Below are positions 3,271 through 47,115 of a stretch of 64,000 nt of DNA, piece by piece. The DNA comes from Vitrella brassicaformis CCMP3155 (Eukaryota; Protista; Chromerida), in NCBI GenBank assembly GCA_001179505.1, contig CDMY01000350.1, positions 1 through 64,000 of the forward strand. The letters run 5' to 3'. A program made the position numbers and the translations under genes. The notes under the pieces are model-generated. The model was given only the letters and a program-made list of their open reading frames with translations. It had not been told where the DNA came from and made no database searches. The stretch's first letter is position 1. Each line of letters begins with the position of its first letter.

Positions 3271-3524
3271 GGCGTGTGTGCGTGTGATGATGGTGAAATG
3301 ACCTGTATGTACGATATGTCTGGTGGAACTCGCTCATGCAGACAGACAATCGACGAATTAGCAGCATACAGCCACACACAAATATATTTGTCCTATGTAC
3401 AGCCATCCATCCAACCATATCCATGGCCAGCCACATGAACACGCAAAACACATGCACACACACAGAGAGATAACGGCCCAAAAGCTACCCCTTAGCTCCA
3501 TCCAGCAATCAGACACACCATCTA

Positions 3525-29726: not shown

Positions 29727-30761
29727 TCAGCCCACCACCCTCTCCCTGTCGATGACGTCACGCTCGAGACCGAATGGCCGCAGCACACGGCGGGCGGCAC
29801 CAACCGACACAGGGTAGCGGTCTGCGAGCGGAAGTAGCTGTACAGCCACAGATTCCTCGGTCGTGTACAGCTCGATGTCGCCCCACCATACGCACAGGTG
29901 CGCAGCGACGGTCTCATTGGGCCGCCAGCCGCTCAGAATCACATCACGAACGTCCCTCGCATCAGCAGCATTAAGATTGCCCCAATCCAAGCGATAGTCG
30001 ACCGCGATGCCCTGACCCTCTGTGATGTCGTCGGTCCTCAGCAGACGGCCACAGCGAAAGTCGTCACGGCCGATTCGTGCAGAGAGCACCAGCTTGCCCA
30101 CCCCCTCTTGACGGCGCCACCGGCAGAGCAGCCTCTTTAGCAAGAATGCCGAGAAGGAAGGGTAGAGCCATCCGCTCCAGCGGATGACAGGGTCGGTCCT
30201 CTGGTAGCCCTCAGCATAGGGATGGCCGGCAGGCAGCTCACCCAGCGGCACCACACCAAACGGCACCTCATTGCCGACCCGATAGGCCCCGTTGTCGGCT
30301 GGCTGCAGCGCCAGGCTGTGTGTGTTGTGTGTGACCATGTGGCCGAACAGCCGATAGATTGCCATCGCCAATGGCAGCTGGTGGAATGCCGTCCTGCTGG
30401 GCAGGTGGGCTGCCAGCCACTGAGCCGACAGCACCAGGGGCAGCCCATTGGCAGGGATCAGCCGATAGATGGCGGCCAGCCGGATGAACCGCCCCATCCC
30501 AGGCCACTCGTTGCTGCCCTGCTCCAGCACATAGGCCGCCCGCAGCACATAGCTGAATGGGAGAGGGGCGGTGCGGTCGATGTCGATGAGGCCGGTGAGG
30601 GAGTGGCGGGCGAGGGAGCCGTCGATGCGCTCCACCAGCAGAGCGGCGGTCACTAGAGCCGCCTTCGCTTGGCAGGCCGCTCTGACACAGACCGCCTCAT
30701 GGACGAGAAGGGACGGCAGAATGCGCCGGCGCCACAGCTCGTCGGGCACCAAATCAGACAT
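29727..30761 (-). CDS. Intronless family member, class B (F-box-like N-terminus), intact, 344 aa
   Basis: Uninterrupted ORF MSDLVPDELWRRRILPSLL...DVIDRERVVG with the shared core. Confidence 0.85.
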   Translation of the reverse strand: MSDLVPDELWRRRILPSLLVHEAVCVRAACQAKAALVTAALLVERIDGSLARHSLTGLIDIDRTAPLPFSYVLRAAYVLEQGSNEWPGMGRFIRLAAIYRLIPANGLPLVLSAQWLAAHLPSRTAFHQLPLAMAIYRLFGHMVTHNTHSLALQPADNGAYRVGNEVPFGVVPLGELPAGHPYAEGYQRTDPVIRWSGWLYPSFSAFLLKRLLCRWRRQEGVGKLVLSARIGRDDFRCGRLLRTDDITEGQGIAVDYRLDWGNLNAADARDVRDVILSGWRPNETVAAHLCVWWGDIELYTTEESVAVQLLPLADRYPVSVGAARRVLRPFGLERDVIDRERVVG

Positions 30762-31416
30762 CGCCTCGAATCACTCACTCAGTCAGCGCATGGCAAACAC
30801 CTGCCAGACAGCACACAGGACACACACAAGGAAGCAGAGAGCGACTGCACACATGGGCGCCAGGTCTGCGCGACGAATGTGGTTCTTCTCTCACCCTTCA
30901 TAAGTTGACCACGTGCAGTGCAGGAGGCACAACGACGCCGGCCCGTGTGATCATGAAGCCTCTGTCCGCTCACTCGCACAGATCAACGAGGCAGAAGGCG
31001 CCTCAGACCTGCCCAACCGCACACAGAAATCACACAAGCTGTCATCCCGGTGCCATCAGCCCCTCCCACCGCCCTCGCACCTTCAATTGGCCACTTGAGC
31101 CTTCCTCAGAGAGGAGGTGGCATTATGTGTGTGGATCGACATCATCTCAGGAGGTCTTTGTGTGCATCACAGAGACCCTGCACCGCCCTGTTGTCATCGC
31201 AAAGACAAAGAGATCTGCAAAAAACCAAGCTCGCAGATGGTCCCGGACGTCTTCCCCCGTCTTGGGAGATTTCGGAAATCCCAAGCCACTCAGTGAAGGT
31301 AAAGAGATGCAAGAGAAGCAGACGAAGCTTGGAGAGCGCTTCACGAGCTGTTTGTGTCTGTCCCAGTGCTTCAGATCTCTCACATCACGCTTCGCTGAGG
31401 CCTCAGGACACTCACG

Positions 31417-32547
31417 ATGCAGCCCACTGGTGCAGCCCACTCCTCGTCCCGTCCCCCCAGCCCTGCCCTCTTCCAGCCCGCCGACCTCTTTGACCTGTCA
31501 TTGCCCATCAGCAAGATGGCCGCCATGGCCATGGCGACTGACGATGCCAAACGAGCCGCTCTCCGCTCGCAGCTCGCCACCCGCACTCGGCAACAGGAGC
31601 TGCTGGGCCACACTGCGGAGACCGTCAACAGCACCCTGCTCAACGCCGTCCAGCGCCACATCCACAAGGCCATCACTCGTCTCGGCCTGGCGGACGTGTT
31701 GGCCTTCGACATTGGCGATAATGTGGAGGCCGGCTTGAAGGTGGTCAATGTGCTGGAGCGGGGCAGTGGCGAGGAGTGGCGGGCGATGGGGCGGTTTCTT
31801 CGGATGGCCTTCATCTACCGGCTCACCCCTGCTGATGCGACGCGGCCTCTCCGGCTGTCGGCCGACGTGCTGCCCACAGCAACGGCATTCCACCAGCTGC
31901 CCCTCGCCATGGCCATCTACAAAATCATCGGCCACATGCTGACATATGGAGGGACCAGCCTGGCGCTGCAGCAGACCGACGACAACGGACACTATCGAAT
32001 CGAAGATCAGTTGTTTCGTGTGGTGCCGTTGGGTGAGCTGCCGGGCGGCCATCGCTATGCTGAGGGCTACAAGCGGACCGACCCTGTCATCCGACGGGGC
32101 AGCGTCCTCTATCCCTCATTCTCGACATTCTTGATGGTCAATGTGCTCGCCAGGTGGTCGGATGGAGAGGGAGTGGGCGACAGGCTGGTGCTGTCGGCAT
32201 GCATCGGCCGTGATGACCCTCGCTATGGCCGACTGCTGATCGACGCCATTACAGAGGATCAGGGCATCGCTGTCGACTACCGCAATGACGGGGGCGATCT
32301 GAATGATGCTGATGGGAGGACTGCTCGTTCTGTAATAGTGAGCGGCTGGCGACTCAACGAGACTGTGGCTGCCTACCTGTGGGTTAATTTGGGCGCCATC
32401 CATCTGTGCACGACCGAGGCACTCGTCGGCGATCGGTCTCAGCCGCTCGCCGACCGCTTCCGAGTGTCCGTTGGTGCCGCCTGCCGTCTGCTGCGGCCAT
32501 TCGGTCTGGAGAGTGACGTCATGGACAGGGGGACGGTGGTGGGGTGA
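31417..32547 (+). CDS. Intronless family member, class A, intact, 376 aa
   Basis: Uninterrupted ORF MQPTGAAHSSSRPPSPALFQPADLFDLSLPISKMAAM...DVMDRGTVVG. Confidence 0.85.
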   Translation: MQPTGAAHSSSRPPSPALFQPADLFDLSLPISKMAAMAMATDDAKRAALRSQLATRTRQQELLGHTAETVNSTLLNAVQRHIHKAITRLGLADVLAFDIGDNVEAGLKVVNVLERGSGEEWRAMGRFLRMAFIYRLTPADATRPLRLSADVLPTATAFHQLPLAMAIYKIIGHMLTYGGTSLALQQTDDNGHYRIEDQLFRVVPLGELPGGHRYAEGYKRTDPVIRRGSVLYPSFSTFLMVNVLARWSDGEGVGDRLVLSACIGRDDPRYGRLLIDAITEDQGIAVDYRNDGGDLNDADGRTARSVIVSGWRLNETVAAYLWVNLGAIHLCTTEALVGDRSQPLADRFRVSVGAACRLLRPFGLESDVMDRGTVVG

Positions 32548-33508
32548 GGGATGTCGGCTGGCGATTGGGCTGTTGTTGGTGCGTTTAATGGGTGGAGAGG
32601 GCTGTCTGTCTGTCTGTCTGCCTGCACGCCGACTGACGAGCAGCGGTGGAAGGAGACTGAGTGATTTGAAATGGGTGGTTGACTGCATTGTGTGCCATGG
32701 GTGGATGGGCGAATGTTCTACTCGTTTTTGTCGGACTCACTTGACTGCATGGCCTCACTCAAATGATTGAATGAATGAAGCACACAGTAATGTGTGAGTG
32801 GTTAGAGATGTCAAGTGTGTGAGTGATTAGTTTGGTGTGCATAGGCGTGCGGCTCGACACACACTGATCAACACGATGCACATGAAGTGATGCACTCACA
32901 CAGGAAGTCACCACACATTCATTCACACTCCCACATACACGCAGAGAGAGACAGTCCACTCACGAACTGCCACCCGTCCGTCGGCCAATACCCAGGCGGT
33001 GTGCTCGTGAATGCACAAAGCCGCATCTCTACCGCAAGGTACCTAACGCAGCAACACACGGACACTCCCCTTCCCCCTTTCCCCCCCTCTCAGTCAGTCA
33101 GTCAGTCAGTCACCACACACCCATGTACGCACACACAGAGAGAGAGAGAGGCTGTGGGAGAGGAGAGGTCATGATTGCTGCACACATGACCGTTCGTCGA
33201 GGCCGCCTCCCTCCCCTGCAGCACAAGCCAGCTAGCTAAGGCGGGCAAAGGCCGGCCCCTCCCGCCCTCTCTGAGTCAGTCAGTCAGTCAGTCTATCGGC
33301 AATATGGATGCTACACACCCCTCAGCCCCACCTCTATCTACTCGTCTGCGACATCCATCGCGCCGTCAGCATCCTCTGCCTCGGCGTCGCCATGGTCCGC
33401 TCCCGCAGGAGGATCGACATACGCTGCATTAATGAATCGACGGGAGACGCAGACAGACAGACATCACACACAGTGAGCTGTGTTGAGATGGATGATTGAC
33501 TACTTGAC

Positions 33509-35671
33509 TCAAGCAGTACCGAGGAATGGGTCTTGCATGTCTCGTGGCTGTGGCCTCCTGGGTCTGAAGGTGTCCTCCTCGCCGCCAGAGTCGTCCTCAT
33601 CCATCGCCCCATCTGCATCCTCCCCCTCCTCCATCGCACCCTCACCCCTGCCACCACCGCCACCACCGTCGTGGCCATCACCACCACCCTGCGGCGCCCC
33701 GCTACCATCCCCACCATCGCCATCGCCGTCGGCGAAGGGGTCGGTCGGCCCATCGAATCGCCGAAACATCCCCGTCCTGTCGATGTAGCCCAGCTGGCCC
33801 CAGTCGAAGTGGCAGTCGTCATTGCCAACGAGGGTGTTGAAGCCCTTGACCATCGGCGGCAGCTGACACTTGTCCTTCTTGTCCTGCCGCTTGGCCTTCT
33901 TGTCATGAAGCTTGTCCAGCTCGGCTTGCCACTTGGCGATCTCGTCCAGGCGCGCCTTGTGCACCACCTCCTTGAGCCCGAGACGGCCATGTTTGTGCAC
34001 CGCCTCACGTGGACGGCTGTCGGCTCTGTCGGCAAGGGCGAAGTATTGGAGTGGCGGCTTGGACGCCTTGGCTCGCTTGGCACCTGGCTCATCCCCATCC
34101 TCTCCGTCATCATCCGGCTGCTGTACGAGTCGTGTCCCTCCGACCACCTCCCCATTGCCGACCACCTCCAGCGACGCCGCCCTGAAGACGAACACCTTCA
34201 TGGCCGCATTGATGCGCCGGCCGATCTCCGTCACGTTCTGCACGGGGCGGCGGCTGTGCCACGTGTGCTCGAGTGCCGATGGGTCGATGAAGAACGACGC
34301 AACGCGCCAGGCGGTTTCCGACATGCCCTTGCCGGCGAATGGCGTCTCGTCGTCCTGCCAGGGGGCCACCGGATGGGCGTGTGTGGGGAGGGGGGGAGGG
34401 GCCACGGAGCGGCGGTATGGGTCGAATGAGGGGAAAACGGCCTTGAGCTGCTGGGCGGTGGCCTTGGGAAGCGCCTGGGTCAGCACGTCGGCCATCTTGC
34501 GCATGGGGTGCAGGGCGGCATTGACGCACCGCATGACGCCAAAAGGCAGCTCCTCGAGGACCGTAACGTACTCGGCCAACGCCAGCTGGAAAACCTTGGG
34601 CTTGTCGGTGCGGCGGCTGTGTGGGATGCGGGAGATGTCGGCGCCGGCCCTCAGGAGCTCGCGGATGCTGCGCTTGCGGTGGGGAATGTCTCTGGTGGCT
34701 CTGTCTCGGACGGATTCCGAGACAAGTCTGTCTGGTTTCTCCGCCCACTCAATCTCGAGATTGAGCCTCCACGCAGCAACACAGAGGGGTGTGTCGTCAG
34801 TGTCGTCCGGTGTCCCCCTGTCGACATCATCAGCGGTCAGACGGGAGCACAGAGACGTGACCCCTTGATGGGAGCCGCACCGTGCCGCTCTGTACAATGC
34901 CGTCCGCCCCTCCTCGTCACGTGCCCTGATGTCCGCTCCGTTGGCCACCAGCATGTCAACGTACTGGTTGACGAATTGCTGGGAGAAGGCGTGAATGGTG
35001 CCGGCCGCAGAATGCAACGCGTCTTGTGCGATGGCGAGAGTGTCGTCGATATCGACGAGCCGCCGGTAGGTCGACAGAAGCCAGTCCTCGTGCACCTCGG
35101 TCGGCTGGTCCGTCGGCAATGTCTGTGGCACCGCCAGCTCCCGATTCGCCCCCCGCTTCAGCAGGAGGTCGATGGCGTTGTCGTTGCCCGACGCAATGGC
35201 CACTTGCAGGGGCGATGGCAGCGGGTCGCCGTCTTCATTGACGCCGCCATTGACATCCGCCCCACCATCGATGAGGGCGGTGAGGATCTCATCCTGGATG
35301 TCGAGGGAGGGGCAGTGCGGCAGAGCGATGGGAGATTCATTGGGATGGTGCCGGACCCAGATGGACGGAACAGTGTTGTCGGTCATGTTGTCGATCGCGA
35401 GAGCGAGGATTGAGAAGGAACGAACAATGCCTTCGAAGGCGTCCTCCCAGGGCGCCTCCAGCTCAGGCACCAAGTTCAAATCGACTCCCCCGCTGATCAG
35501 CTGCGTGACGTCCTGTCCGCTCGGGAGGGTGCGGCCCAGGACACCATCCCACAGCTGTTCGCTTGGAGGGACATATGCTTCGACTGACATGGGGCCAACA
35601 GCGCGGTACCAGCTCATGTCAACGATGTCCGCTCGCTCCCAGCCACGGGGCAGAGCTGCGCCCTCGGCCAT
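33509..35671 (-). CDS. Intronless ankyrin-repeat protein (about 720 aa) with a Gly/acidic tail
   Basis: Ankyrin motifs ALIDGGADVN, SPLQVAIASGNDNAIDLLLKRGAN, MLVANGADIRARDEEGRTALYRAARCG, DTPLCVAA, ELLRAGADI. First plausible ATG is MAEGAA at 35671. Confidence 0.85.
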   Translation of the reverse strand: MAEGAALPRGWERADIVDMSWYRAVGPMSVEAYVPPSEQLWDGVLGRTLPSGQDVTQLISGGVDLNLVPELEAPWEDAFEGIVRSFSILALAIDNMTDNTVPSIWVRHHPNESPIALPHCPSLDIQDEILTALIDGGADVNGGVNEDGDPLPSPLQVAIASGNDNAIDLLLKRGANRELAVPQTLPTDQPTEVHEDWLLSTYRRLVDIDDTLAIAQDALHSAAGTIHAFSQQFVNQYVDMLVANGADIRARDEEGRTALYRAARCGSHQGVTSLCSRLTADDVDRGTPDDTDDTPLCVAAWRLNLEIEWAEKPDRLVSESVRDRATRDIPHRKRSIRELLRAGADISRIPHSRRTDKPKVFQLALAEYVTVLEELPFGVMRCVNAALHPMRKMADVLTQALPKATAQQLKAVFPSFDPYRRSVAPPPLPTHAHPVAPWQDDETPFAGKGMSETAWRVASFFIDPSALEHTWHSRRPVQNVTEIGRRINAAMKVFVFRAASLEVVGNGEVVGGTRLVQQPDDDGEDGDEPGAKRAKASKPPLQYFALADRADSRPREAVHKHGRLGLKEVVHKARLDEIAKWQAELDKLHDKKAKRQDKKDKCQLPPMVKGFNTLVGNDDCHFDWGQLGYIDRTGMFRRFDGPTDPFADGDGDGGDGSGAPQGGGDGHDGGGGGGRGEGAMEEGEDADGAMDEDDSGGEEDTFRPRRPQPRDMQDPFLGTA

Positions 35672-36261
35672 GATGTGGTCGTCACCGATCACTGCATGTA
35701 CCACACACACGGACCAATCACACGTATGCCCGTCGGCTCCATGAATGAGTGCCCGTCTGCTCTCCCTCGCTCGCCTCTGTCCGCCTCACCTGAGTGTGCG
35801 CGAGAATGGCATCATGCAGGCTGCAGGCCGCAACACCACTCACCCACAGCAAGCTACCTCTCAGCACAACACTCGAAAATGAGTGCCTGATGCAGCCATC
35901 ACAACACGTGGAGGAGATCCCTGCAGCCATCACAGCACAACGATGTGTGGCGCGTGAGGCGGTCTCTCTTGCGTGAATGTATGGATTACTTGCTGCAGAG
36001 ATGTGGGCAGCACCCTGAAAGGCTATGGCATGGATGGGAAGCGCTCACACTGCTGCTCTATGGGCTATCTTTGCCGTCGAAAGCCGATGGATGGAAGGCC
36101 GCGCACTGGGCGGGCAGCGGACGAGCAACAAAGAAGGCGGCCCTGCGATGGTCAGCTGCCGGCTGCCCTCCTCCTTCAATCTCCACGGTTGCGAGCTCAG
36201 AGAATGCGTTGCGAGGCGTGATCTCCTCATGGCGTGATTGACAGCGTGTGGCGCATTGTCC

Positions 36262-38553
36262 ATGCATCTCGCTCTCATGCAGCCCTCTCCCGTCTTTCTC
36301 GCTTTCTTTCTCACAGCAGCCCATACCATCTCGCCGCCGCCAGGGAGGCAGGCGTCATCGCTTGAGCAGCCCAGCAGCAACCACAGCAGCAGCAGCAGCA
36401 GCAGCAGCAGGAGCAGCCTGTTTCGGTCGTTTGTGGTGCGGAAGGCTGACGATGTGCACGTGGCGAGCTCTGGCTGGGGATGGGACGTGAGTGTGCGGAT
36501 GGACGGAGAGGGCATGAGCGAAGATTTGTACCTGGTCGTCAAGGACAAGACGCATCGGCGGCATGGCGCCGATGCATGTGATGCGCCGGCCACCCAGGAC
36601 GCTGTGTGGGGTGAGCAAAGGACACGGGAATGGCACCATACCTTATCACGTGTGGATGTCTGTCTGTGTGTCTGTCTGCGTGTGTGTGTGTGTGTGTGCA
36701 GGTCAGACCCCTTCTCGCGTGTCGGAGGACCGTCGCTCGGCCTCGTTCCATCTGCACAAGCAGTCCAACAGCGAGTTCGGCCAATCCTTCATTCTCTGTC
36801 TGTACCAGTCCGTCAAGGCCGACGGTGGCGGCATCATGCTGTCCGAGAGCGTCCGCATCCCCTCTCTCAGCCTGCCCGAGCCACGGCTGACCACACCAGT
36901 GGCGATGAACGTGTCCTCTGTGGCCTTCCGGCTGCCCCTTGTGGCACATGGGCTCACCGAGTACACTATATTGTCGCTCAAGCCTTTTGAAATAGGTCAA
37001 AACACGCCCACAGACGTTGCTCTCTGTCTGGTCACATGACTCTCCGCCTGTGTGACGATGCAGGCTGCGGTAGCGATTACCACTCCTACAGCCTGGCGTG
37101 GCGGTCGGGCCACCCGGCCTCACTCAGACCCACCCACCTCCCACATGCAGCAGCGGCCTTCATGAGCACCATCATGCGCGGCCTCTGGGGGGCCGGCGGC
37201 AGGGGGGGCGATTCGAGCGTCGACGCGGCGGCGGACGGCGGGATGAGGAAGTACGTGTTTGATTTCGACGCTAAGGGCAGAGAGGCCGACGCCAAGAACA
37301 AGCAGTTTGCCATATGCCTCTTCCGTGAGCCCACCCGACCTTCACGCGATGGATGCAATGCACCCGCATGTGCGCTTCACGCTGCTCTGCAGGTCATTCA
37401 TTCGACCATGAGCCCCTCTCTGTCGGCACCATATTGGTCAAGCCGACCCGCTCCGGCCGTTCCATGATGCTGGCGCTGTTTTGGGTGGCCATGGTGCTGT
37501 CTGTGGCCCTCCTGCTGGGCGGAGTGGGCTTCCTCTCAGCAGTGGGGGGCAAAGAGCCCACCGCACGACCGAGCAGACGACGCGCCAGACATCAGGTGGG
37601 TGCCTGATGACGGACATACTTGGGGGTCACGTGTGATGTGCTGTGCCATGTGCGTACGTGTTGCAGTCCCGACGTAGTGAGAATGCCGGGGTGGGCGACT
37701 CGCCAACACAGCCCAAGAAGTAAGAAAAGGCGCGACGGAGAGGGGAGGGAGAGAGAGAGAAGCACAGCCACCTCATGACCCTGTCACCTTGTTCCATCTG
37801 CCCAGGTCCAAGCTCTGCCACCGTCGCCACGGCCACACGACCAGCTCCCGATCGCACTCCAACCAGTCGCAGGGCATCCAGAAGGAGTGGATCCAGGTCG
37901 ACTCCTCCAGCCTCTACGACTCCCTCCCCTCACCCACCACCGTCAACCGGTCCACCAGCGGCGGCCTCCCTGGCCTCGCACCCTCGTCGTCGGCAGAGTT
38001 CCGCAGCTGCCAGTCGTCACCCCTCAACAGGGGAGGGGACAGTGACGGCCCCACCCCCACAGCTATATTGGCGCAGAACCTGCAGGCCACTGAGGCGGCA
38101 GAGAGGGGGAGAGGCGGCAATGGCAGCAGCAGCAACAGCAACAGTACGCCGTTTCGTCTCGGCTCGCTGCTCTTCGGCAGCCACCAGCAGCAGCAGCAGC
38201 AGCAGGGTAGGAAGGGCAAGGACGTCAAGCGTCCGATATCGACCGCCATGGCCCCAGCCAGCAGCACCAACACCCGCACCCGGACGAGCACCATCATCAA
38301 CAACGACCGATTCGCCGCCCCGCACATGCGTTTCGCCGCCAACAACAGCCTCAACATCAGCACGGGCGGCCTGAGTGTGCGGTCGGGTGATGGGGGTGAG
38401 GGTGACGAGGGCGACTGGTCCACAGTGGGCGACGACAGCAGTCTGGGCGGCCGCAGCCCACTGCCGCCGATGGACGATGCTGCGTCGGGGAGCTCCAGCA
38501 GATGGGGCGCACCAGCCAGGGGGGCGGGGGCAGTGAGGGAAACACGCCTGTGA
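36262..38553 (+). CDS. Hypothetical type I membrane protein (signal peptide, luminal domain, one TM helix, low-complexity Ser/Gln-rich tail)
   Basis: N-terminal hydrophobic MHLALMQPSPVFLAFFLTAA and TM segment MMLALFWVAMVLSVALLLGGVGFL. Exons join in phase via a small exon at about 37668-37720 to the terminal ORF ending 38553. Confidence 0.6.
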
Positions 38554-39622
38554 TGATATTATTCCATCCATACATGCACACATTGAGAGAGGGAGGGAGG
38601 GAGAGAGGGAGGGAGGGAGGGTTCATCTTCTGGGTGGGTTCGCTTCATACATCTTGCTGGCTGGTTTACAGTGTGTCCACACACACATATATATGTATGT
38701 ATGTATGCGTATACGTACCGCCAATATGTATACACGTGCACGCGGCCCTCGTGTACACACGTTGGTGTCTGTCTGCCAAATGTGGTTGGTGTTTGATTGG
38801 ATTGGTTCATCCACGAGGGCGACTGCCTAGCCACATCCATCCATCCATCCATCGAATCGACCAGCTCAGCGAGGCCCTGTCCATCCAGGCCACCTGCAAA
38901 TGAAGCATGTACAGGGACGATACACGTACGACAGAGGGAGGGAGGGAGGGAGAGAGGGGGAGAGGGAGGCCTGCTTAGACGTGTGTGTATGCCATGTCTG
39001 TATGTCTGCAGCATGGATGTGGCCATGGATGTGTGTGTGTGTGTGTATAAGTACAACATTCATCCTTGCAGACAGACAGACAGACAGACAGACGTTCGTG
39101 TGTGGGTGCTGCTGCTGCGTGTGACAACTTGCTTTCCTGTCTGCCTTCCTGTGTCGATAGCAGCTGCTCATCTACGCCTGTCCGTCCGTCTGGCCCTCCT
39201 CGCGATGCGTGTGTTTTGAAGTCTCGATGCATGTGTATGTGTCTGTCGCGTGCTGCTGCTTTAGTGCGTGTGTGTGCTGTTCGTTTCTGCCTGACACGTG
39301 CGGGCTGCCCGACAATTTTGCTGTGCGTGTTGTCTGGCTGCTTGCCTTCGTGTTTGATTGGCTGCTTGGGCGGCTGTGTACATCTATCTGATTAGTCTTT
39401 TCTGCCCGTCACGTCGCTGCCTAGTCGTCCTCATTGTGTTGTGTGGGTGGGTGTTGTATGTATCGGCGGCAGAGTGCCGTTGATGACTAGATGTGCATAT
39501 GCTGGCGCGCCGAATGCGGCGCGGACGTCCGGGTGTACGGAACAGCTTGGTGCGATGATTGCGATCCATTAGTGCTGTCAAAGCTCGCAAATCAGAACCG
39601 CTCTCTCTCAGCAGCCTGACTA

Positions 39623-41336
39623 ATGCCGTCAGACAGATCACGGTGCGTGGGCAGTGAATGAATGAACGAGTCACAAGATCTGTGTATTGTCCGCCATCAG
39701 ATACACGTTTGACGATTTGGGCACCGATGGGGAGATCCACGCCATCATCCCCATCGCCGACCACATCAAGGTCACTGACGCACAGACACAAACAAAGGCA
39801 CACACACAGAAACACAGAGATCTGTCAATAGTTGCCTGCACATCCTATCTCTGTGATCTCTCTCTGCTGCGGCCGTGCATCAGGCCAAGGACATGGCCAT
39901 CGACATCCACAGCTCCAGGCTGAAAGTGGCCATCAAGAGCGAGAACACACCTATCATGGTACGGTGCGACAGATGGCAACCACGAACACACGTGTGTGAG
40001 TGCAAGCCGTTTGCGAATTAATGACCCCCAGGATGATTCGCTGTGGGCCAAGGTCAATGCCGACGACAGCTACTGGGAGATCGACACTGTCGAGGGAAAG
40101 GGTACGTGTCTGCACACGAGCAATGATCAACGCACCGGGTGTGGTGTGGTATGTATGGTGTGTCTGTCTGCGGCGTGCCTGTAGGTCGTGTGGTTCGTGT
40201 GGTCCTCAAGAAGGTGCAGGCGTACACCAACTGGGAGTACCTCCTCAAATGCGACGAAGTCCCGCCAGACACCACCGTCACACACAAGGTCAGACATCGG
40301 TTCACACACACTTACACACACACACACACGCAGACGCCTTTCTGTCTGTCTGTCTGTCTGCGTGTAGGTGTATTTCGATATATCGCTCGACGACGAGCCG
40401 GCCGGGAGGGTACTCATGGGCCTCTACGGCAACCAGTGCCCAAAAACAGGTAGGTATCCACCGATCCATTGCGCCTTCATGTGTCCTGTGCGTGGATTCA
40501 GTCGAGAACTTCCGCGCACTGTGTGTGGGCGACCGCACGAGCGAGGACGGCACGCCGCTCAAGTACAAGGGCTCATTCTTCCACAGAATCATCCCCGGCT
40601 TCATGTGCCAGGCAACCATACACACATGCACACACGCACACACACACAGACGACACACACGTGCATTTGTGGTGCAGGGCGGCGACTTCACAAAGAATGA
40701 CGGCACCGGTGGTCTGTCCATCTATGGGGAGAAGTTTGCTGACGAGGACTTCGGCATCAAACACACACACGGGGGCCAATTGTCAATGGCCAACGCAGGA
40801 CCCAATACCAACGGCAGCCAGGTACGCACCCACACAGACTCACACACGTCGTTTCTCGCCTTGAGTGCCACAAACCAATCTGTCTGTCTGTCTGTCTGTC
40901 TGTCTGTGATGTCATTCATTCATGTGTGTGCAGTTCTTCATCACTGTGACGGAGTGTCCCCACCTGGACAAGAAGCATGTCGTCTTCGGGCACGTCATCG
41001 ACGGATTCGACACCGTCGTCAAACAAATGGAGGCCGTAAGCTGACAGACAGACACACACTGGTCTGGTGCCCCCACTTGCACCAGGGAGTGCACCGTGAC
41101 ATGTGCTGTGTCGACAGTGCGGTGCATCGGACGGGAGCACGAGCAAGAAGGTGGTGATCGCCGACTGTGGTGAGTCTGACGATCACCAAGAGAACTGAAT
41201 GCAGCCATGGCAGGCAGGCAGGCAGGCAGGCAGGCAGAGAGAGATACATAGAGCGGCCAGGCTGGGCAGCTGTGACGTACCATGTCCAGGGACTCTTGTT
41301 TGTCTGTCGTGTGTTTAGGTGAGTTGACTGAGTGAA
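39623..41336 (+). CDS. Cyclophilin-type peptidyl-prolyl isomerase with an N-terminal CS (p23/NudC-like) domain
   Basis: [68 protein letters not shown] (CS-like). Then [70 protein letters not shown]. Confidence 0.92.
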
Positions 41337-41598
41337 GTGCGTGCCTTTATAGGGGCTGCCGTGCCGAGTAGCACTTCCATGCGTAATAGTGCATGCGTGA
41401 CGTAAACCGGCCGACCAACACAGACCCATTCATGCATTCATCATGTGTGAATGTCACTCATCGCACGCAGCAATCCAATCCAGCACGGCCACACACGCAC
41501 ACCAGCCACCCAATATAAGCCATCCATGGCCATCCATCTGTGTGTATGCTCCGTCCGCACAGCCAGCACACGCATCTACCACCGGCCAAACTACCCTT

Positions 41599-42090
41599 TC
41601 AGTGTGCCCCCTCTCCCTCTCCCTCCTTGTTGCCCTCCTTCGCGTCGCTATCGGCCATGACGGCGTCGCCTTCGTCACCACCCTCGTCGGCGGCCTCGCT
41701 GTTGGCCTGCCCCAGCAGCTCCTCGAACGCACGACACACCACCGGCAACTCGCCCTTGGCACCATCTGCACCAATATCCATCCGCCCACCCACACATGCC
41801 AGGCGTCATCCATCCATTCTCATCAAAATTGTGAACTCACCTGAGAGGTTGACGTTTCCGTCGATGAGGTCGCCGATTTTGATATCCTTGATCTCTGTGG
41901 GTAGGATGCCCAGCCAGTGCTGCTTGCGGATGAGAAGGTTGAGCCGCTGGTCCTCGGCCGCCATCCTCAGCCCACGCTCCAACGCCTCGAGCATCATCTC
42001 GCCGTACGCACGCTGAATGGGATTGATCGTGGTCTCGTCTGCCGCTGCAGCAGCCATCGGATGGTCTCCTGATGCCGCAGCAGCTGCCAT
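41599..42090 (-). CDS. Small two-exon hypothetical protein (about 138 aa, acidic tail)
   Basis: Exon 1 (42090-41841) splices GT-AG in phase to exon 2 (41765-41599): MAAAAASGDHP...QRAYGEMMLEALERGLRMAAEDQRLNLLIRKQHWLGILP...DGAKGELPVVCRAFEELLG... Confidence 0.6.
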
Positions 42091-42190
42091 TCGCCCTTCT
42101 AAAACTCCTGGCCGTGGCCAGGCTATCGGCGAGGGTGTGCGAGCTGAAGCTGAAGTGTTCTCCTTTGCCAGCTTTCGCGGCGTTTCAGCG

Positions 42191-42516
42191 ATGAATGGCT
42201 CATCATCCAACAGCAAGGGCACGGCAGGCATCAGCAGCAAGCAGGCAGACAAGATCTGTCACGGAGCCATGCTGCTGAATGCGGGCGGGTCGGTCATGGC
42301 GTTCCCGCGTGATTCGCTGCTTCACGATGAGCTGAAGGGCACCTGCCTGGCTGTGCTTCTTCATCGCTTCGACAGCTGGATGCTCACAGATACTACCGGC
42401 ATTCACTTCATCGACACAGACCCGTTCTACTTCATCTGGTGCGAGAGAAGCAACATACATGTACACTCCCACTGCCACTGTTCGCTTTGAGACTCTCGTC
42501 TGTCTGTCTGTCTGCG

Positions 42517-42548
<32 letters not shown>

Positions 42549-44704
42549 GTGCTAGGTTGGCTGTCAAGCTTCGTTACCTGAGGGACAACCGCATCGACGT
42601 GAGTGAGATCTGTGAGGGCTGCCCCTCTGCATTCGCCTTCTACCACGACCGATTCTTGGCCAAGACGGACCTCACAATCGAGCCGCAGACCGGCGACGAC
42701 AAGAGTGATGCCTTCCGCGGCTTCATAGCTGAGATGAGGGCCTTCATCGACTCATCAGTGGCGGGCGGGAAGGGCGGGAGTGAGGTGCTGAGCGTGTGTG
42801 TGGATGGCTGTGCGGTGGCCACAACCGACGCCACGCTGGACGACTTCACCGCACTCTACAACCGATTCACCAAGTGAGAGAGTTCTGAGGCAGGGAGCCA
42901 CACTGGGACGATTGTGCGGCCGTCTATGTGTGCAGGCTCACTGGGCCGGTCATCGACGTATCTGCGGACCACCTCCGCAAGTAAGACGACAGACAGCAGG
43001 CAGATCTGCCAAGGGATGGATATATGTGTGTTTTGTGTGGTATTGTGCAGGATCGTCGATTACCTTCGTCGCATTCGCATCGCCCCCGACGCCGCCACGC
43101 CGCTGCCTACGAGCAGTTCTTTCGACGAGCTGCTTTACGCGTGTGAGATGTACGGCCTCATGGAGCAGGTGTACCTCTCGATGATCGGCAAGTCCCACAG
43201 CCACATCAAATGCATCCTCAAGTGAGTCGCAGACCATACACAAACAGCACAGGGGCGGGAGAGATCTGACATGGCATCCCTTCTGTTTTCTGTGTGTGTC
43301 ATCAGGAGTTCCCATGACGATTGTGAGTTTGAGACGTTGGTGCAGCGGGCAGAGGGTCTGCAAGGTGGCCTGCTGTTCGTCATCGAGTGTGAGCATGAGA
43401 CCCGCCGCCACCGCTTCGCCTGCCACGTTGACGGCCCCCTCATCGCCCCGTCAGACCCCAAAGCTGAGCTGCGCACCGGCCGCCCCGTCGCCTTCTACTC
43501 CATAAGCGGCGCGTTCAAGGAGGGCGATGGTATCGTCATGATCGCCGTGCCACACGACTGGCAAAATGTGGACGTCGCAGGCATACAGGGGGCGGTCAAC
43601 GACGGCATGGGTGTGCCTCGTGGCAAGGTGGCCATCGGTGGCGGTCGGCTGTAGCTGGGGTGTGCGGAGGATGGGCAGCCGGTGAGCGACCTTCGCCACT
43701 GCCAGCAGTGGCTGCGGACGGGCGACCTGCCTGACGGCAAGACGTATCGGGGCAGCTTCGATGGCGACGGACGGACCACGTTGGCCGGCAGCCGTGACTT
43801 TACCTCCACACGACTGGAGATCTACCAGGTCAGACACACACATCGATGGCAGGGGGCGCTGAATGCACCTATGGGTCGTTGTCTTTCTGTGTGTACGTGC
43901 AGGTGTGGAGCACTCGTCCTGCTGACCCCATCCTCTCAGCCGACGGCCTCCAGGCACTCATCAAAATGACGAGCGACGCCACAATGACCGGAAAGCTGCT
44001 CTACAAGTGAGGGAGCCAACGAATAAGTGACAGCGCTGTGATCTCGTCGGTGCATTGTCTGTCTGTCTGTCTGTCTCTCTGTTCGTGTGCCTGTCAGGGG
44101 TGAGCGTGACGGCTGGGCGCACAAGACCATGATGGCCAAGGTGGGCAAGGCGGCCGACCTGCTCTTCGTCATCAAGGACATGGGCGGCCACGTCCTCGCC
44201 TCCCACCTCAAGAGGCAGCTCAAGCTGCCAGACAACCCCACTGACGTGGAGAGGACCATCAACTGCCCCGTCACCTTCTACTCGATCAGCGGCGCATTCG
44301 AGGAGGGAGACGGCATCGTCAAGATCGCCGTGCCCAACAACTGGCAGTGGGTGGTGGTTGCCGGGACGGAGGCGGAGGTCACGAGCAGCCAGGGTGTGCC
44401 TCGTGGCAGTGTGTGCATCGGTGGCGGCCGGCTGTGGCTGGGGATTGGGAAGAATGGGCAGCCGGCTGGCGACATGCGGCTCTGCCAGCAGTGGCTGAGG
44501 AGGAGTGATCTGCCCGACGGCAAGACGTATCGGGGCGACTTCAATGACGACGGGCAGGCCACGTTGGCGGCCACTCTCAGCTTCACGTGTGCCGATATTG
44601 AAATCTACACTCTGCAGGTGAGAGGGGCAAGAGTGAGGGAGGGAAGAAGACGAAGCCACACATGAATGTCTCGATGTGTTCAGGCGTCGGAGGGCAGTGG
44701 CTGA
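42191..44704 (+). pseudogene. BTB/POZ (KCTD-type) x2 plus TLDc-like x2 gene, with an in-frame TAG at 43652-43654
   Basis: LLNAGGSVMAFPRDSL...IHFIDTDPFYFIWLAVKLRYLR (T1/BTB) and a second BTB-like segment (LRKIVDYLRR..ELLYACEMYGL). Two paralogous TLDc-like repeats follow (LLYKGERDGW..LLFVIKD..FYSISGAF..GGGRLWLG..LEIY). The first repeat reads GGGRL*LG. Confidence 0.75.
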
Positions 44705-45550
44705 ATGCGGTGGTGTGACGTCGCGCTCTGCCAGTCGACGTAAGAGCTGTTTAGGGGTGGGGGAGAAGCTGATGGTCGGCAGGGGGGTAAGTGGTCGTCG
44801 TGTGTGTGGGAGGATGGGTATGTATGTATTTGACTAGCTCGTGCGGTGCGTGCATTTGACCTCCCTGCTATGTGTATATCAATCGGCAGACAATCGGCCC
44901 TTGAGATGATTCTGGCTATCGCAATTGCAAGCTTGGTGCATGAGTCCGCGTATGGGTGACCTGACAAGGGTTTGCGTCATCATTGCTTGTCTGCCTTGCC
45001 TGCCTGCGTGCTGTAGACTTCATTGAGCGGGAAGGAACACACACATTCGTCCCGGCTGTGTCCGTGCGTCCGTGTGTGCACGAGGTGTCGGTCCATGTTG
45101 TACATGCATGTATGGATACGGATGGCGCTCCGATTCGCGCTTCTCGTGTGATGATGGTTTAGATCTCCCCCTCCCTCCCTGTCTCTCTGTCTGCCTCTCT
45201 GTCTGTCCATCTTCATCTCCATCTGTCTCTGGCTGTGTATACATACGCTCCTTGTCCATCTCCCTCCCTCCCTCCCTGCCTCCCTCTTCATGGCGGATAC
45301 ATGCGCATTTTATGCTGCCTGGATGGACTTGCCGTGCATCGCCCATCAAGGCACTCCATGGATGGCATCGCATCAGTCGGCATGAACAGGCAAGTCAGTC
45401 AGTCAGTCAGTCAGTCAGTCGTACCCGCGCCCGAGACGGGACGTCATGATGCAATAGCAAGCGCCAGACATCGACACCAGGGTGCCATAGGGAATTCTGG
45501 CCAACTCGGCATCATCATGGTGCCTTGTCGTGTCCCGCATACGCTCGCCG

Positions 45551-45633
45551 GGTGACATGTCCGAGTGGTCTAAGGAGCCAGACTCAAGTTCTGGTAGACC
45601 TAGTCTGCGTGAGTTCGAACCTCACTGTCACCA
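45551..45633 (+). tRNA. trnL-CAA: tRNA-Leu(CAA), intronless, long variable arm
   Basis: Acceptor stem GGTGACA/TGTCACC with discriminator A. D arm TCCGAGTGGTCTAAGGA, anticodon arm CCAGA-CTCAAGT-TCTGG, variable arm TAGACCTAGTCTGC, T arm GTGAG-TTCGAAC-CTCAC. Confidence 0.95.
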
Positions 45634-45644
45634 TGCTCAAACAC

Positions 45645-45676
45645 CTAGGGTTAGGGTTTATAGGGTGTAGGGTTTT
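45645..45676 (+). repeat. Degenerate telomere-like TTAGGG array / G-quadruplex motif ending in TTTT (putative Pol III terminator)
   Basis: CTAGGG TTAGGG TTTATAGGG TGTAGGG TTTT begins 12 nt after the tRNA. Confidence 0.8.
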
Positions 45677-46020
45677 GGTGAGTTGGGGAGAGGAACCTCC
45701 GGCCGTATCGTTTTCCCAGGTGCTGTTGATCCCGTGCAGCTTCACTGCATCGCCGCACGTGCCATCATTGATTGACTCACTGACAGTCACTCACATCGGT
45801 GAGCGAAGGACATGATGCATGGCCATCGCGTGACAATTTTGTTATGCAGGCTTGGTTGGCTTCCTGAGCTGCCATCGCCTCTCATTGCCAGCGGCATCAA
45901 AACCGTTGAGTCATCAGCACAGGTGAGGAAGCAACACAAAGCAAACGAATGAACACACCAGTCTGGCACCGTCTGCATCTTATTGCCTGTTTGCCGTTGG
46001 TCCAGATCACTCACTCACCC

Positions 46021-47115
46021 ATGGCGTCCGAGTCGGTACCCTCCCTGTGGTCCATAGCACTCAAGAAGACAGCACACATGCTCGATGACACCGCCAAGCG
46101 GCCGACACTCCTCACCCGTATCGAAAGGCAGCCGCCCACAGAGATCCCCAGGGGCATCACTCTACCGACCGTCCTGGGACAGCGGATCGAGAAGGCCATG
46201 GACCGCGACGACCTTCGTGGCGTTCTGGTCCTTGATATTTCTGACGTGGCCGGGGCCATCAAGACCGTCCACGTGCTGGAGAGATGCAGCGGCCACTGGC
46301 AGATGATGAAGACGTTCCTTCGGCTGGCCGCCGTCCATCGGCTGACCCCCGCCAACGCCACACCGCCCCTGCGGCTCTCGGCTGAGTCGCTGCCCGCCAC
46401 GACGGCATTCGATCAGATGCCCCTCGCTATGGCTTTATACGCGACAATCGGACAGCAGCTGACACACAGAGGGACCAGCCTGGCGCTGCAGCAAGTCGAC
46501 GACGGACACTTCTGGATCGGCGATTTGCCGTTTCGTGTGGTGCCGTTGGGTAGGCTGCCGGGCGGCCATCCCTACACTAAGGGCTACACAAAGACCGACC
46601 CCCCCATATATCTACGATACAATTTCGGATGCACCAGAGACCTCTTCCCCTCATTCTCGACATTCCTGATAGCCATGCTGCTCCGCATGTGGTACCGTGC
46701 ACGGGGTGTGGGTTACAGGATGGTGCTGGGTGCAGGCATCGGCCGTGACGACCCTCGTTATCGCCGTCTGATTACCGAGCGCATCACAGAGGATTTGGGC
46801 ATCGCTGTCGACTGGCGCTACGATGGGGGCGATCTGAATGCTGCCACCCAAGTCAGTGACCATCGTCGTGTGATTGTGAGCGGCTTCCGACTCAACGAGA
46901 CCATCGCTGCCCATCTGCGGGTGGTGCGAGGCGTCATCGAGCTGTGGACGACCGAGCGACCTGCTGCCAGTCGATCTCATCCGCTCGCTGTGCGCTACCC
47001 CGTGTCGATGCCCCTGTGGGGTGCTGTGCTGCGGCGATTTGGTCTCGAACACGATGTCATTAATGGGGGGAGGGTGGCGGGGGGTCCATCAATTGGGAGC
47101 ACGCTGTCGGGATGA
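46021..47115 (+). CDS. Intronless family member, divergent class A (clearest BC-box-like N-terminus), intact, 364 aa
   Basis: MASESVPSLWSIALKKTAHM...HVLERCSGHWQMMKTFLRLAAVHRLTP... shared core ...DVINGGRVAGG. Confidence 0.85.
   Translation: MASESVPSLWSIALKKTAHMLDDTAKRPTLLTRIERQPPTEIPRGITLPTVLGQRIEKAMDRDDLRGVLVLDISDVAGAIKTVHVLERCSGHWQMMKTFLRLAAVHRLTPANATPPLRLSAESLPATTAFDQMPLAMALYATIGQQLTHRGTSLALQQVDDGHFWIGDLPFRVVPLGRLPGGHPYTKGYTKTDPPIYLRYNFGCTRDLFPSFSTFLIAMLLRMWYRARGVGYRMVLGAGIGRDDPRYRRLITERITEDLGIAVDWRYDGGDLNAATQVSDHRRVIVSGFRLNETIAAHLRVVRGVIELWTTERPAASRSHPLAVRYPVSMPLWGAVLRRFGLEHDVINGGRVAGGPSIGSTLSG

What the first reader, a model, noticed from the sequence alone, without database searches (positions are those of the whole stretch)
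29727..47115. Same core domain fused to two alternative cullin-adaptor-like N-termini (F-box-like versus BC-box-like)
Seen: class B copies (20690, 30761, 60085) begin (L/V)PD(E/D)LW(R/L)(R/G)RILPSLLVHEAVCVRA(A/T)C. Class A copies begin with an unrelated helix, PSLWSIALKKTAHM (46039-46080) or ADLLDIAISKAAEM (57739-57780), and ADLFDLSLPISKMAAM in the other three. Known: the F-box consensus is LP.E.L..IL..L......R.VC (binds SKP1-CUL1), and the BC-box consensus is (S/T/P)LxxxC/AxxxPhi (binds Elongin B/C, CUL2/5). Inference: one substrate-binding module has been wired to two different cullin-RING ligases, giving a diversified, polymorphic degradation system. I know of no description of this, but both motif matches are short and by eye only.
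Basis: inference. Interest (0 to 1): 0.8.

Follow-up and report, generated by a model that had tools for sequence, protein, structure and literature searches.

The report
Algal F-box receptor family, two N-termini
This stretch of the alga Vitrella brassicaformis holds eight copies of a large gene family found only in that species; one class starts with a probable F-box, which would link it to the SCF ubiquitin ligase, while the other class starts with a different conserved helical piece that shows no sign of being the proposed BC-box.

Summary
Three copies are disrupted.

**Class B is a probable F-box.**
- An AlphaFold2 model (pLDDT 92.6) matches the F-box regions of ten solved F-box proteins, most of them SKP1-bound, among the top 50 structural hits.
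- P6, L18 and R27, read here as the F-box 'LP', helix-1 Leu and helix-2 Arg, are conserved or invariant.
- Distant paralogues give weak Pfam F-box hits, all below threshold.

**Class A is not supported as a BC-box.**
- Only 3 of 50 class A proteins fit the motif, which occurs about 0.9 times per 1000 aa by chance.
- There are no SOCS or VHL hits by Pfam, PDB profile, language-model or structure search.
- Cul2/Cul5-Elongin ligases are reported to be animal-specific.

**The core** has no Pfam family. It looks weakly SUKH-like plus a TBP-like domain, recalling FBXO3. Its 203 representative clusters appear confined to Vitrella.

**The core tree** places class A inside class B, with class B N-termini reappearing on class-A-like cores. 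This points to recombination among clustered paralogues.

Verdict: a lineage-specific F-box receptor expansion with an F-box-less sister class. Moderately interesting.

The parts
29727..30761 (-). Class B gene, intact (344 aa, P0001): F-box-like N-terminus plus core
   Evidence: ORF and translation. AF2 model has pLDDT 92.6 and pTM 0.90. Contigs of two runs show a spliced 5'UTR. An in-frame stop lies 3 codons upstream of the ATG.
30606..30752 (-). F-box-like module of the class B gene (residues 4-52; helices 7-17, 20-29, 31-34, 39-52)
   Evidence: VIA-align places 10 F-box proteins in the top 50, all over model residues 1-85, with Z 4.1-6.3. P6 is at least 90% conserved; L18 and R27 are invariant in 22 class B N-termini. 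The top language-model hit is an F-box cluster at 0.94.
30081..30515 (-). Middle alpha+beta domain of the core (residues 83-227), weakly SUKH/Smi1-Knr4-like
   Evidence: Matches 2prv (Z 4.7, 118 aligned), 2icg (Z 4.4, 107 aligned) and FBXO3 9kbf_C (206 aligned over 1-267, Z 5.5). The class A model repeats this with 2icg 4.9, 2prv 4.8 and 2pag 4.0. No Pfam SUKH hit.
29730..30104 (-). C-terminal domain of the core (residues 220-344), TBP-like / phosphoglucomutase C-terminal-like alpha/beta fold
   Evidence: Z 5.5-6.6 to PMM/PGM domain 4 and to TBP.
30798..30891 (-). 5'UTR intron of the class B gene (minus-strand GT..AG; ends within about 3 nt)
   Evidence: Joint 30797>30892 in contigs of runs X1 and X7.
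31007..31078 (-). Second 5'UTR intron of the class B gene (minus-strand GT..AG; ends within about 2 nt)
   Evidence: Joint 31006>31079 in a contig of run X7.
31417..32547 (+). Class A gene, intact (376 aa, P0025), divergent neighbour of the class B gene; opening ADLFDLSLPISKMAAM
46021..47115 (+). Class A gene, intact (364 aa from MASES; the ORF extends upstream to 45949)
   Evidence: Translation. AF2 model has pLDDT 91.3.
46045..46128 (+).
   Evidence: AF2 secondary structure. A2 alignment gives the consensus P.L..LAI.KAA.MAMS.D..RRAALRSQI. No F-box, SOCS or VHL match.
46162..46206 (+). Helix shared by both classes just before the core (residues 48-62)
   Evidence: This is the only region that hhalign aligns between the class A and class B N-termini.
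55778..56902 (-). Class A gene, intact (374 aa, P0035)
57229..58770 (+). Class A gene; the family part probably starts at MQPTRTPP near 57679; opening ADLLDIAISKAAEM at 57739-57780
   Evidence: The public gene model P0043 splices the upstream part.
59057..60085 (-). Class B copy with an in-frame stop after codon 200 (ORF 59483-60085, P0017); similarity continues in the same frame
20690..21725 (+). Class B copy disrupted by a frameshift near 21010-21034 and a stop at 21237-21239; probable pseudogene
4525..5650 (-). Class A copy with a frameshift near 4966; probable pseudogene; lies next to a copia-type element

Best explanation
The window is a cluster of a multigene family restricted to Vitrella brassicaformis. 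Each gene encodes a roughly 280-aa two-domain core: an alpha+beta domain that is weakly SUKH-like, followed by a TBP-like alpha/beta domain. The core is preceded by one of two N-terminal modules of about 70-100 aa. Class B carries a divergent but genuine F-box. These proteins most likely act as substrate receptors of SKP1-CUL1 (SCF) ubiquitin ligases, with the core as the target-binding part, an architecture like FBXO3 or SKIP16. Class A has the same core, but the first two F-box helices are replaced by a different, conserved two-helix module that is neither a recognisable F-box nor a BC-box or SOCS box. Class A proteins are most likely F-box-less paralogues. They would bind the same kind of targets without recruiting a cullin through Elongin BC, acting either as non-degrading binders or competitors, or docking to an unknown partner. 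The family evolves by tandem duplication, decay (3 of 8 copies are broken) and recombination, which has moved N-terminal modules between core lineages. Shown here: the copies, the two exclusive N-termini, the F-box fold prediction, restriction to Vitrella, transcription and splicing of one class B copy, and the mosaic phylogeny. Inferred: SKP1 binding, target binding by the core, and the role of class A.
For: - **Copies and classes:**
- **Organism and restriction:** 89 close hits and 203 representative clusters at E<=1e-3 in 1.84 billion proteins. All 17 of the 20 sampled clusters that carry a source name are Vitrella; the other 3 are unnamed JGI records.
- **F-box, structure:** the AF2 class B model (pLDDT 92.6) matches F-box regions of beta-TrCP1 (Z 6.3, 79 aa, 18% identity), Cdc4 (6.0), FBXO31 (5.9), Fbs2, FBXO3, SLY1, FBXW8, Fbw7 and FBXO42. 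The class A model has the same core and gives none of these, which serves as an internal control.
- **F-box, sequence:** P6 is at least 90% conserved and L18 and R27 are invariant across class B. The language-model top hit is an F-box cluster at 0.94. Paralogue P0159 hits Pfam F-box-like with E=0.0037 at the equivalent position. P0153, which UniRef names an F-box protein, aligns to the class B N-terminal profile with hhalign probability 79% and E=1.7e-5.
- **SKP1 in Vitrella:** the genome has the Skp1 modification pathway genes, which implies Skp1 (PMC11570480).
- **Constraint:** the N-terminal modules are constrained (dN/dS 0.15 for a B pair, 0.40 for an A pair), while cores run at 0.6-0.8.
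- **Core fold:** SUKH structures 2prv, 2icg and 2pag, plus FBXO3, recur for both models. These PDB entries are SUKH members, and FBXO3 is F-box plus SUKH (PMC3113570).
- **Mosaic history:** in the core tree class B is basal and paraphyletic and class A is nested. The window-type class B clade (99*) is sister to the window-type class A clade within a 98* clade. P0011/P0014 (B) group with P0046 (A) at 100*. Forcing class A into one clade costs 112 lnL units, AU p=0.045.
- **Expression:** spliced 5'UTR contigs for the 29727-30761 copy; MMETSP transcripts exist for both classes.
Against: - No class B sequence reaches Pfam's F-box threshold. Only 1 of 22 gives E=0.022, and the best relative scores 17.4 bits against a cut-off of 24.3.
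- A class B N-terminal profile finds no F-box protein in the PDB at E<=10.
- The Trp usual in F-box helix 3 is absent.
- The structural Z-scores (4-6.3) lie in the range the tool calls 'middling', and Foldseek finds nothing significant.
- The SUKH resemblance is weak (Z 4-4.9) and has no sequence support.
- The AU test is borderline, and the grouping was examined after a first tree had been seen.
- Gene conversion of cores between neighbouring genes would give the same mosaic pattern as transfer of N-termini.
- No binding partner was tested for either class.
Confidence: 0.6

Rival explanations
1. Class A N-termini are very divergent F-boxes that still bind SKP1. On this view both classes are SCF receptors and the 'two adaptors' are one.
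For: - Class A is nested within class B on the core tree, so it derives from F-box ancestors.
- It has the same number and order of helices before the shared helix: 9-21 and 27-36 versus 7-17 and 20-29.
- Conserved Pro and Leu residues start the first helix, and a D...R..L pattern follows in the second.
- The module is under purifying selection.
Against: - hhalign aligns only the shared downstream helix, not helices 1-2 (probability 11%).
- No F-box protein appears among the top 50 structural hits of the class A model, against 10 for class B with the same core.
- There is no F-box hit by Pfam or by the language model.
Confidence: 0.2
2. One reading: class A N-termini are BC-boxes that recruit Elongin B/C and a Cul2/5-type cullin, so one core is wired to two cullin-RING ligases.
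For: - About a third of class A proteins (16 of 50) fit a relaxed S/P-L-x3-A/S-x3-A/T pattern in helix 1. From my own knowledge, this resembles the Ala-type BC-box of HIV Vif.
- Vitrella has a homologue of the Elongin C-like protein SPARKEL (PMC11321763).
- The module is conserved and so is probably a binding surface.
Against: - The strict motif occurs in 3 of 50 class A proteins and is absent from the commonest window subtype.
- The same motif occurs 0.88 times per 1000 aa in these proteins, and in 32 of 69 class B proteins somewhere.
- No SOCS_box or VHL Pfam hit, no PDB profile hit other than designed coiled coils, no language-model hit, and no VHL, SOCS or Elongin A structural hit.
- Cul2/Cul5-Elongin complexes are described as animal-specific (PMC2785787).
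- The Toxoplasma Elongin C-like protein did not pull down ligase components.
Confidence: 0.06
3. The family is not a ligase system at all. The 'F-box' is a generic three-helix cap, and the genes are fast-evolving, partly decaying, repeat-associated sequences with no conserved function.
For: - Three of eight copies are broken.
- Core dN/dS is 0.6-0.8.
- A copia-type element lies next to one copy, and one public model fuses a copia tail to a family gene (P0070).
- There is no Pfam-threshold F-box.
Against: - Both AF2 models are very confident (pLDDT 91-93), which needs coherent co-variation in the family.
- dN/dS of the N-terminal modules is 0.15-0.40.
- Both classes are transcribed, and one window copy has spliced 5'UTR introns.
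- The structural hits for residues 1-85 are specifically F-box proteins, not generic helical bundles.
Confidence: 0.1

Closest known systems
FBXO3 / SKIP16-type F-box proteins (F-box + SUKH domain)
   Same: An N-terminal F-box is followed directly by an alpha+beta domain that structure search places nearest the SUKH structures 2prv, 2icg and 2pag. The solved SKP1-FBXO3 complex aligns over 206 residues spanning both parts. PMC3113570 describes SUKH as the substrate-recognition part of such E3 subunits.
   Different: There is no sequence-level SUKH signal. The C-terminal domain is TBP-like, not the ApaG/DUF525 Ig-like domain of FBXO3. According to PMC3113570, FBXO3 is single-copy and shows no lineage-specific expansion in eukaryotes, whereas this family has at least 203 clusters at 50% identity in one species.
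Lineage-specific F-box receptor expansions in nematodes and plants (F-box + FTH/DUF38, F-box + FBA). These are recalled from my own knowledge and were not checked here.
   Same: Hundreds of clustered paralogues. A conserved F-box sits next to a fast-evolving target-binding domain (dN/dS 0.15 versus 0.6-0.8). Many copies are pseudogenes and the family shows birth-and-death evolution.
   Different: The binding domain is different and is confined to a chromerid alga. About 40% of classified members (50 A against 69 B) have swapped the F-box for another conserved module.
BC-box / SOCS-box / VHL-box receptors of Cul2/Cul5-Elongin BC ligases
   Same: An amphipathic helix with Leu at position 2 and a small residue at position 6 occurs in some class A members. 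It is followed by a second helix.
   Different: The consensus is not kept across the class (3 of 50). There is no profile or structural match. The ligase type is reported to be animal-specific.

Membership tests
F-box (PF00646 / PF12937) | Three-helix fold of about 40-50 aa that can be superposed on solved F-boxes | tested here: met
   In the AF2 model, residues 1-85 align to F-box regions of 10 solved F-box proteins. Z is 4.1-6.3, 55-80 residues align, and rmsd is 3.3-3.9 A in the best rows. The class A model, used as a control, gives none.
F-box (PF00646 / PF12937) | Sequence profile match at or above Pfam's gathering score | tested here: not met
   One of 22 class B N-termini hits F-box-like at E=0.022. 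Paralogue P0159 scores 17.4 bits against a cut-off of 24.3. A PDB profile search finds nothing.
F-box (PF00646 / PF12937) | Conserved L-P at the start of helix 1, Leu at the end of helix 1, and Arg in helix 2 | tested here: met
   Alignment A1 has P6 in at least 90% of sequences and L18 and R27 invariant. The mapping onto the Pfam consensus was done by eye.
F-box (PF00646 / PF12937) | Binds SKP1 | not testable with these tools
   No complex prediction or experiment is available. Literature implies that Vitrella has Skp1.
BC-box / SOCS box / VHL box | Consensus (A,P,S,T)-L-x3-C-x3-(A,I,L,V) in helix 1, kept across the family | tested here: not met
   A strict regex that even allows C/S/A at position 6 fits 3 of 50 class A proteins, and a relaxed one fits 16 of 50. 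Background is 0.88 per 1000 aa.
BC-box / SOCS box / VHL box | Profile or structural similarity to SOCS_box or VHL alpha domains, including a Cul2/Cul5 box | tested here: not met
   No such hit by Pfam at E<=10, PDB profile, the language-model atlas, VIA-align or Foldseek. Caveat: the N-terminus is a small part of the model that was searched.
BC-box / SOCS box / VHL box | Elongin B/C and Cul2 or Cul5 present in the organism | not tested
   Literature only. An Elongin C-like homologue exists in Vitrella (PMC11321763). Cul2/Cul5-Elongin complexes are described as animal-specific (PMC2785787).
SUKH (Smi1/Knr4, Syd, US22) superfamily | Alpha+beta fold that can be superposed on YobK (2prv), 2icg and 2pag | tested here: inconclusive
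   Z is 4.0-4.9 with 103-119 of about 150 residues aligned, seen for both models. This lies within the tool's 'middling' range.
SUKH (Smi1/Knr4, Syd, US22) superfamily | Sequence profile match to SMI1_KNR4 or SUKH Pfam families | tested here: not met
   No such hit at E<=10 in 64 members. The PDB profile search is empty.
FBXO3 orthologues | C-terminal ApaG/DUF525 Ig-like domain after the SUKH domain | tested here: not met
   The C-terminal domain matches TBP and phosphoglucomutase domain 4 (Z 5.5-6.6). No Pfam DUF525 hit.

The most novel reading that the evidence does not exclude
The class A N-terminal module is a new docking helix pair. It would connect the same fast-evolving SUKH-like binding core to a partner other than SKP1, for example the Elongin C-like SPARKEL homologue or another SKP1/BTB-fold protein. 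Vitrella would then run two parallel arms on one recognition repertoire: a degrading arm (F-box) and a second effector arm, with recombination moving cores between them. This would be an intracellular surveillance or immunity-like system.
Probability: 0.12. Interest if true: 0.75.

Novelty: new variant of a known kind. Interest (0 to 1): 0.45.

Why it matters
Chromerids are the closest photosynthetic relatives of apicomplexan parasites, and their ubiquitin-ligase receptor repertoire is almost unstudied. The genome paper's main text does not mention F-box or ubiquitin at all.

This family has at least 203 clusters at 50% identity. That is probably around 1% or more of the 22,817 predicted genes. 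It has no Pfam domain and no detectable relatives in 1.84 billion representative proteins outside Vitrella.

If class B proteins are SCF receptors, this would be an F-box expansion of the kind seen in plants and nematodes, but found in an alveolate. Its binding fold is one that bacteria use for toxin immunity.

The F-box-less class, and the exchange of N-terminal modules between core lineages, offer a natural experiment on how substrate receptors are gained, disarmed or rewired.

Tried and rejected
- **Whole-protein Pfam scans.** Scans of window copies and of 64 family members found nothing relevant.
- **Foldseek against the PDB.** Nothing at E<0.1 for either model. The ESM-atlas fold search gave only TM<=0.30.
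- **hhalign of the two N-termini.** Only the shared helix aligned, so homology of helices 1-2 could not be shown. hhalign of the class B profile to P0159 also failed, although Pfam sees a weak F-box there.
- **A single hypervariable loop.** Variability and indels are spread over several loops, and I could not tell whether that note concerns the same family.
- **Bacterial promoter/terminator scan.** This is irrelevant for a eukaryote and I ignored it.
- **RNA evidence.** No run is recorded as RNA. Only contigs were available, so depth and expression level cannot be read; only the spliced joints are informative.
- **Trypanosomatid origin.** I considered this at first from GC content. The protein search rejected it.

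Full report
**What is in the window**

The window has 58-60% GC with a few AT-richer patches.
- 4525-5650(-)
- 20690-21725(+)
- 29727-30761(-)
- 31417-32547(+)
- 45949/46021-47115(+)
- 55778-56902(-)
- 57229-58770(+)
- 59057-60085(-)

Three copies open with (L/V)PD(E/D)LW..RILPSLLVHEAVCVRA(A/T)C (class B). Five open with PSLWSIALKKTAHM, ADLLDIAISKAAEM or ADLFDLSLPISKMAAM (class A).

Three copies are damaged:
- The 4525 copy has a frameshift near 4966.
- The 20690 copy has a frameshift near 21010-21034 and a stop at 21237.
- The 60085 copy has a stop after codon 200.

The family genes lie among ordinary genes: an ankyrin-repeat protein, a cyclophilin, a TIP41-like protein and an amino-acid transporter fragment. 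A copia-type retroelement ORF also lies in the window.

**Organism and size of the family**

A protein search with the intact class B copy returns 89 relatives. Nearly all are 'unnamed protein product' of Vitrella brassicaformis CCMP3155, a chromerid alga. A few are MMETSP transcripts or short unnamed metagenome contigs.

A profile of 64 members was searched against 1.84 billion representative proteins. It finds 203 clusters at E<=1e-3, of which 134 are at E<=1e-10. I looked up 20 of these, including the weakest. Seventeen carry a source name and all of those are Vitrella; the other three are unnamed JGI records.

No member reaches any Pfam family over the core. The main text of the chromerid genome paper mentions neither F-box nor ubiquitin (PMC4501334).

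**Two exclusive N-termini**

HMMs built from the two N-terminal alignments (A1 and A2) classify 69 of 217 collected proteins as class B, 50 as class A and none as both. Profile-profile comparison of the two N-termini aligns only the helix just before the core, RID..L.R..L.GLIDID against HI..A.SRLGL.DVLAFD. The class-specific part is therefore the first 35-45 residues.

**Is class B an F-box?**

Sequence evidence alone is weak:
- One of 22 class B N-termini gives Pfam F-box-like at E=0.022.
- The class B N-terminal profile finds no PDB chain at E<=10.

Structure is more telling. An AlphaFold2 model of the 29727-30761 product, built on the family alignment, has mean pLDDT 92.6 and pTM 0.90. Its N-terminal helices are 7-17, 20-29, 31-34 and 39-52.

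Foldseek finds nothing significant. An exhaustive VIA-align search of 48,161 PDB representatives places ten F-box proteins among the top 50, each aligned through its own F-box to model residues 1-85:

| Protein | Z | Notes |
|---|---|---|
| beta-TrCP1 (two entries) | 6.3, 5.5 | 79 residues aligned, 18% identity for the first |
| Cdc4 | 6.0 | |
| FBXO31 | 5.9 | |
| Fbs2 | 5.5 | |
| FBXO3 | 5.5 | |
| SLY1 | 5.2 | |
| FBXW8 | 4.4 | |
| Fbw7 | 4.3 | |
| FBXO42 | 4.1 | |

The class A model has the same core and gives none of these. That works as an internal control.

Further support:
- P6 is conserved in at least 90% of divergent class B sequences, and L18 and R27 are invariant. I read these as the F-box LP, the Leu at the end of helix 1 and the Arg of helix 2.
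- A language-model search with residues 1-62 ranks an F-box cluster first, at 0.94.
- Distant paralogues link the module to recognised F-boxes. P0159 hits F-box-like at E=0.0037 and F-box at E=0.02, at the equivalent position.
- P0153, named an F-box protein by UniRef, aligns to the class B profile with hhalign probability 79% and E=1.7e-5.

I put the F-box fold at about 0.8 and actual SKP1 binding at about 0.65. SKP1 binding itself is inferred. Vitrella is reported to have the Skp1 modification pathway (PMC11570480).

**Is class A a BC-box?**

I find no support for this.
- A regex for the BC-box, even allowing C/S/A at position 6, fits the N-terminal helix of 3 of 50 class A proteins. It does not fit ADLFDLSLPISK, the commonest subtype in the window.
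- A relaxed version fits 16 of 50.
- The strict motif occurs 0.88 times per 1000 residues across these proteins, and somewhere in 32 of 69 class B proteins. A match by eye therefore carries little weight.
- Pfam gives no SOCS_box or VHL hit at E<=10 in 18 class A N-termini.
- The PDB profile search finds only designed coiled coils.
- Language-model searches find nothing usable.
- The class A model (pLDDT 91.3; helices 9-21, 27-36, 48-62) matches no VHL, SOCS-box or Elongin A chain in VIA-align or Foldseek.

One caveat applies: the N-terminus is a small part of the model that was searched, and I had no prediction jobs left to fold it alone.

On the organism side, a homologue of the Elongin C-like protein SPARKEL is reported in Vitrella. 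In Toxoplasma, however, that protein did not bring down ligase components (PMC11321763). Cul2/Cul5-Elongin complexes are described as animal-specific (PMC2785787).

I put the BC-box reading at about 0.06.

**What the core looks like**

Both models place the middle domain nearest the SUKH structures:
- 2prv, Z 4.7-4.8, 118 residues aligned
- 2icg, Z 4.4-4.9, 107-119 residues aligned
- 2pag, Z 4.0

PMC3113570 lists these entries as SUKH members. It describes FBXO3 as F-box plus SUKH, with SUKH as the likely substrate-recognition part, and reports no lineage-specific expansion of it in eukaryotes. The solved SKP1-FBXO3 complex aligns to the class B model over 206 residues spanning the F-box and the middle domain (Z 5.5, rmsd 6.3 A).

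The C-terminal domain resembles TBP and phosphoglucomutase domain 4 (Z 5.5-6.6). It does not resemble the ApaG-like domain of FBXO3.

These Z-scores are in the tool's 'middling' range and have no sequence support. I therefore treat the SUKH likeness as probable, about 0.55, and not as shown.

**History of the two classes**

A maximum-likelihood tree of 119 cores shows class B in all the deep branches of the main clade. Class A forms a nested group of 53 rows (95*).

Inside that group, class B N-termini reappear twice:
- The window-type class B clade (12 rows, 99*) is sister to the window-type class A clade (22 rows), within a 98* clade.
- P0011/P0014 (class B) sit with P0046 (class A) at 100*.

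Starred branches force at least three changes of N-terminal class. On a 55-row set with a site-heterogeneous model, forcing class A into one clade costs 112 log-likelihood units (AU p=0.045). This is borderline, and I had already seen a first tree.

Within a class, the N-terminal module is much better conserved than the core:

| Pair | N-terminus dN / dS (omega) | Core dN / dS (omega) |
|---|---|---|
| B pair | 0.022 / 0.143 (0.15) | 0.21 / 0.27 (0.79) |
| A pair | 0.03 / 0.075 (0.40) | 0.19 / 0.30 (0.64) |

Together these results point to recombination or gene conversion among clustered paralogues. They also point to functional constraint on both N-terminal modules and to fast evolution of the presumed binding core. 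Variable and indel-prone positions are spread over several loops rather than concentrated in one.

**Expression and gene model**

No run is recorded as RNA. However, contigs from two runs join 30797 to 30892 and 31006 to 31079, with GT..AG ends on the minus strand. These are two introns in the 5'UTR of the class B gene.

In the spliced leader, an in-frame stop lies three codons before the ATG at 30761. The F-box-like motif therefore sits at the true N-terminus.

The first exon reaches at least 31174. That is about 250 nt from the ATG of the divergent class A gene at 31417. MMETSP transcripts exist for both classes.

**Other fusions**

Distant Vitrella relatives carry the same core behind other domains:
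- TPR repeats
- HMG boxes
- ubiquitin
- a cyclin C-terminal domain
- SAP
- in P0183, a KCTD-type BTB domain plus TLDc

It rests on a single automatic gene model, and I did not check that model.

**Verdict**

The BC-box half is not supported.

The family is best described as a Vitrella-specific expansion of F-box receptors. It has a new, possibly SUKH-like, binding core and a large sister class in which the F-box has been replaced by another conserved helical module of unknown partner.

That is a new variant of a known kind of system, of moderate interest. The open question that could raise the interest is what the class A module binds.

Noticed in passing
window 558-3377 (-): A 939-aa ORF encodes a Ty1/copia-type polymerase (RVT_2 E=6e-54, retroviral SH3-like domain). 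It sits in a 44% GC patch, next to the frameshifted class A copy at 4525-5650. One public gene model elsewhere (P0070) fuses a copia tail to a family gene.
   Followed up: partly
window 30798-30891 and 31007-31078 (-): Two short GT..AG introns in the 5'UTR of the class B gene are seen as joints in contigs of two public runs. The leader contains several short upstream ORFs. The first exon reaches at least 31174, about 250 nt from the ATG of the divergent class A gene, which suggests a shared bidirectional promoter region.
   Followed up: partly
P0183 (Vitrella CEM01874.1, another contig): A 1015-aa model carries a KCTD-type BTB domain (BTB_2, E=3e-5), a TLDc fragment and then the family core. 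Other distant relatives carry TPR, HMG-box, ubiquitin, cyclin C-terminal or SAP domains in front of the core. The gene models were not verified.
   Followed up: no
P0031 and P0085 (Vitrella, other contigs): Two class A members have a CBM_25 carbohydrate-binding domain (E=1e-5, just under Pfam's threshold) inserted between the N-terminal module and the core.
   Followed up: no
window 33509-35710 (-), 40000-41157 (+), 27915-28652 (+), 52146-52967 (+): Ordinary genes are interspersed with the family copies: an ankyrin-repeat protein, a cyclophilin-type isomerase, a TIP41-like protein and an amino-acid transporter fragment. These ORFs are probably exons of intron-containing genes.
   Followed up: no
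window 48001-50000 and 54001-56000: Two further patches of lower GC (46-48%) stand against the 58-60% background. ORFs there (48566-49762, 54508-55338) have no Pfam hit. They may be repeat-derived.
   Followed up: no
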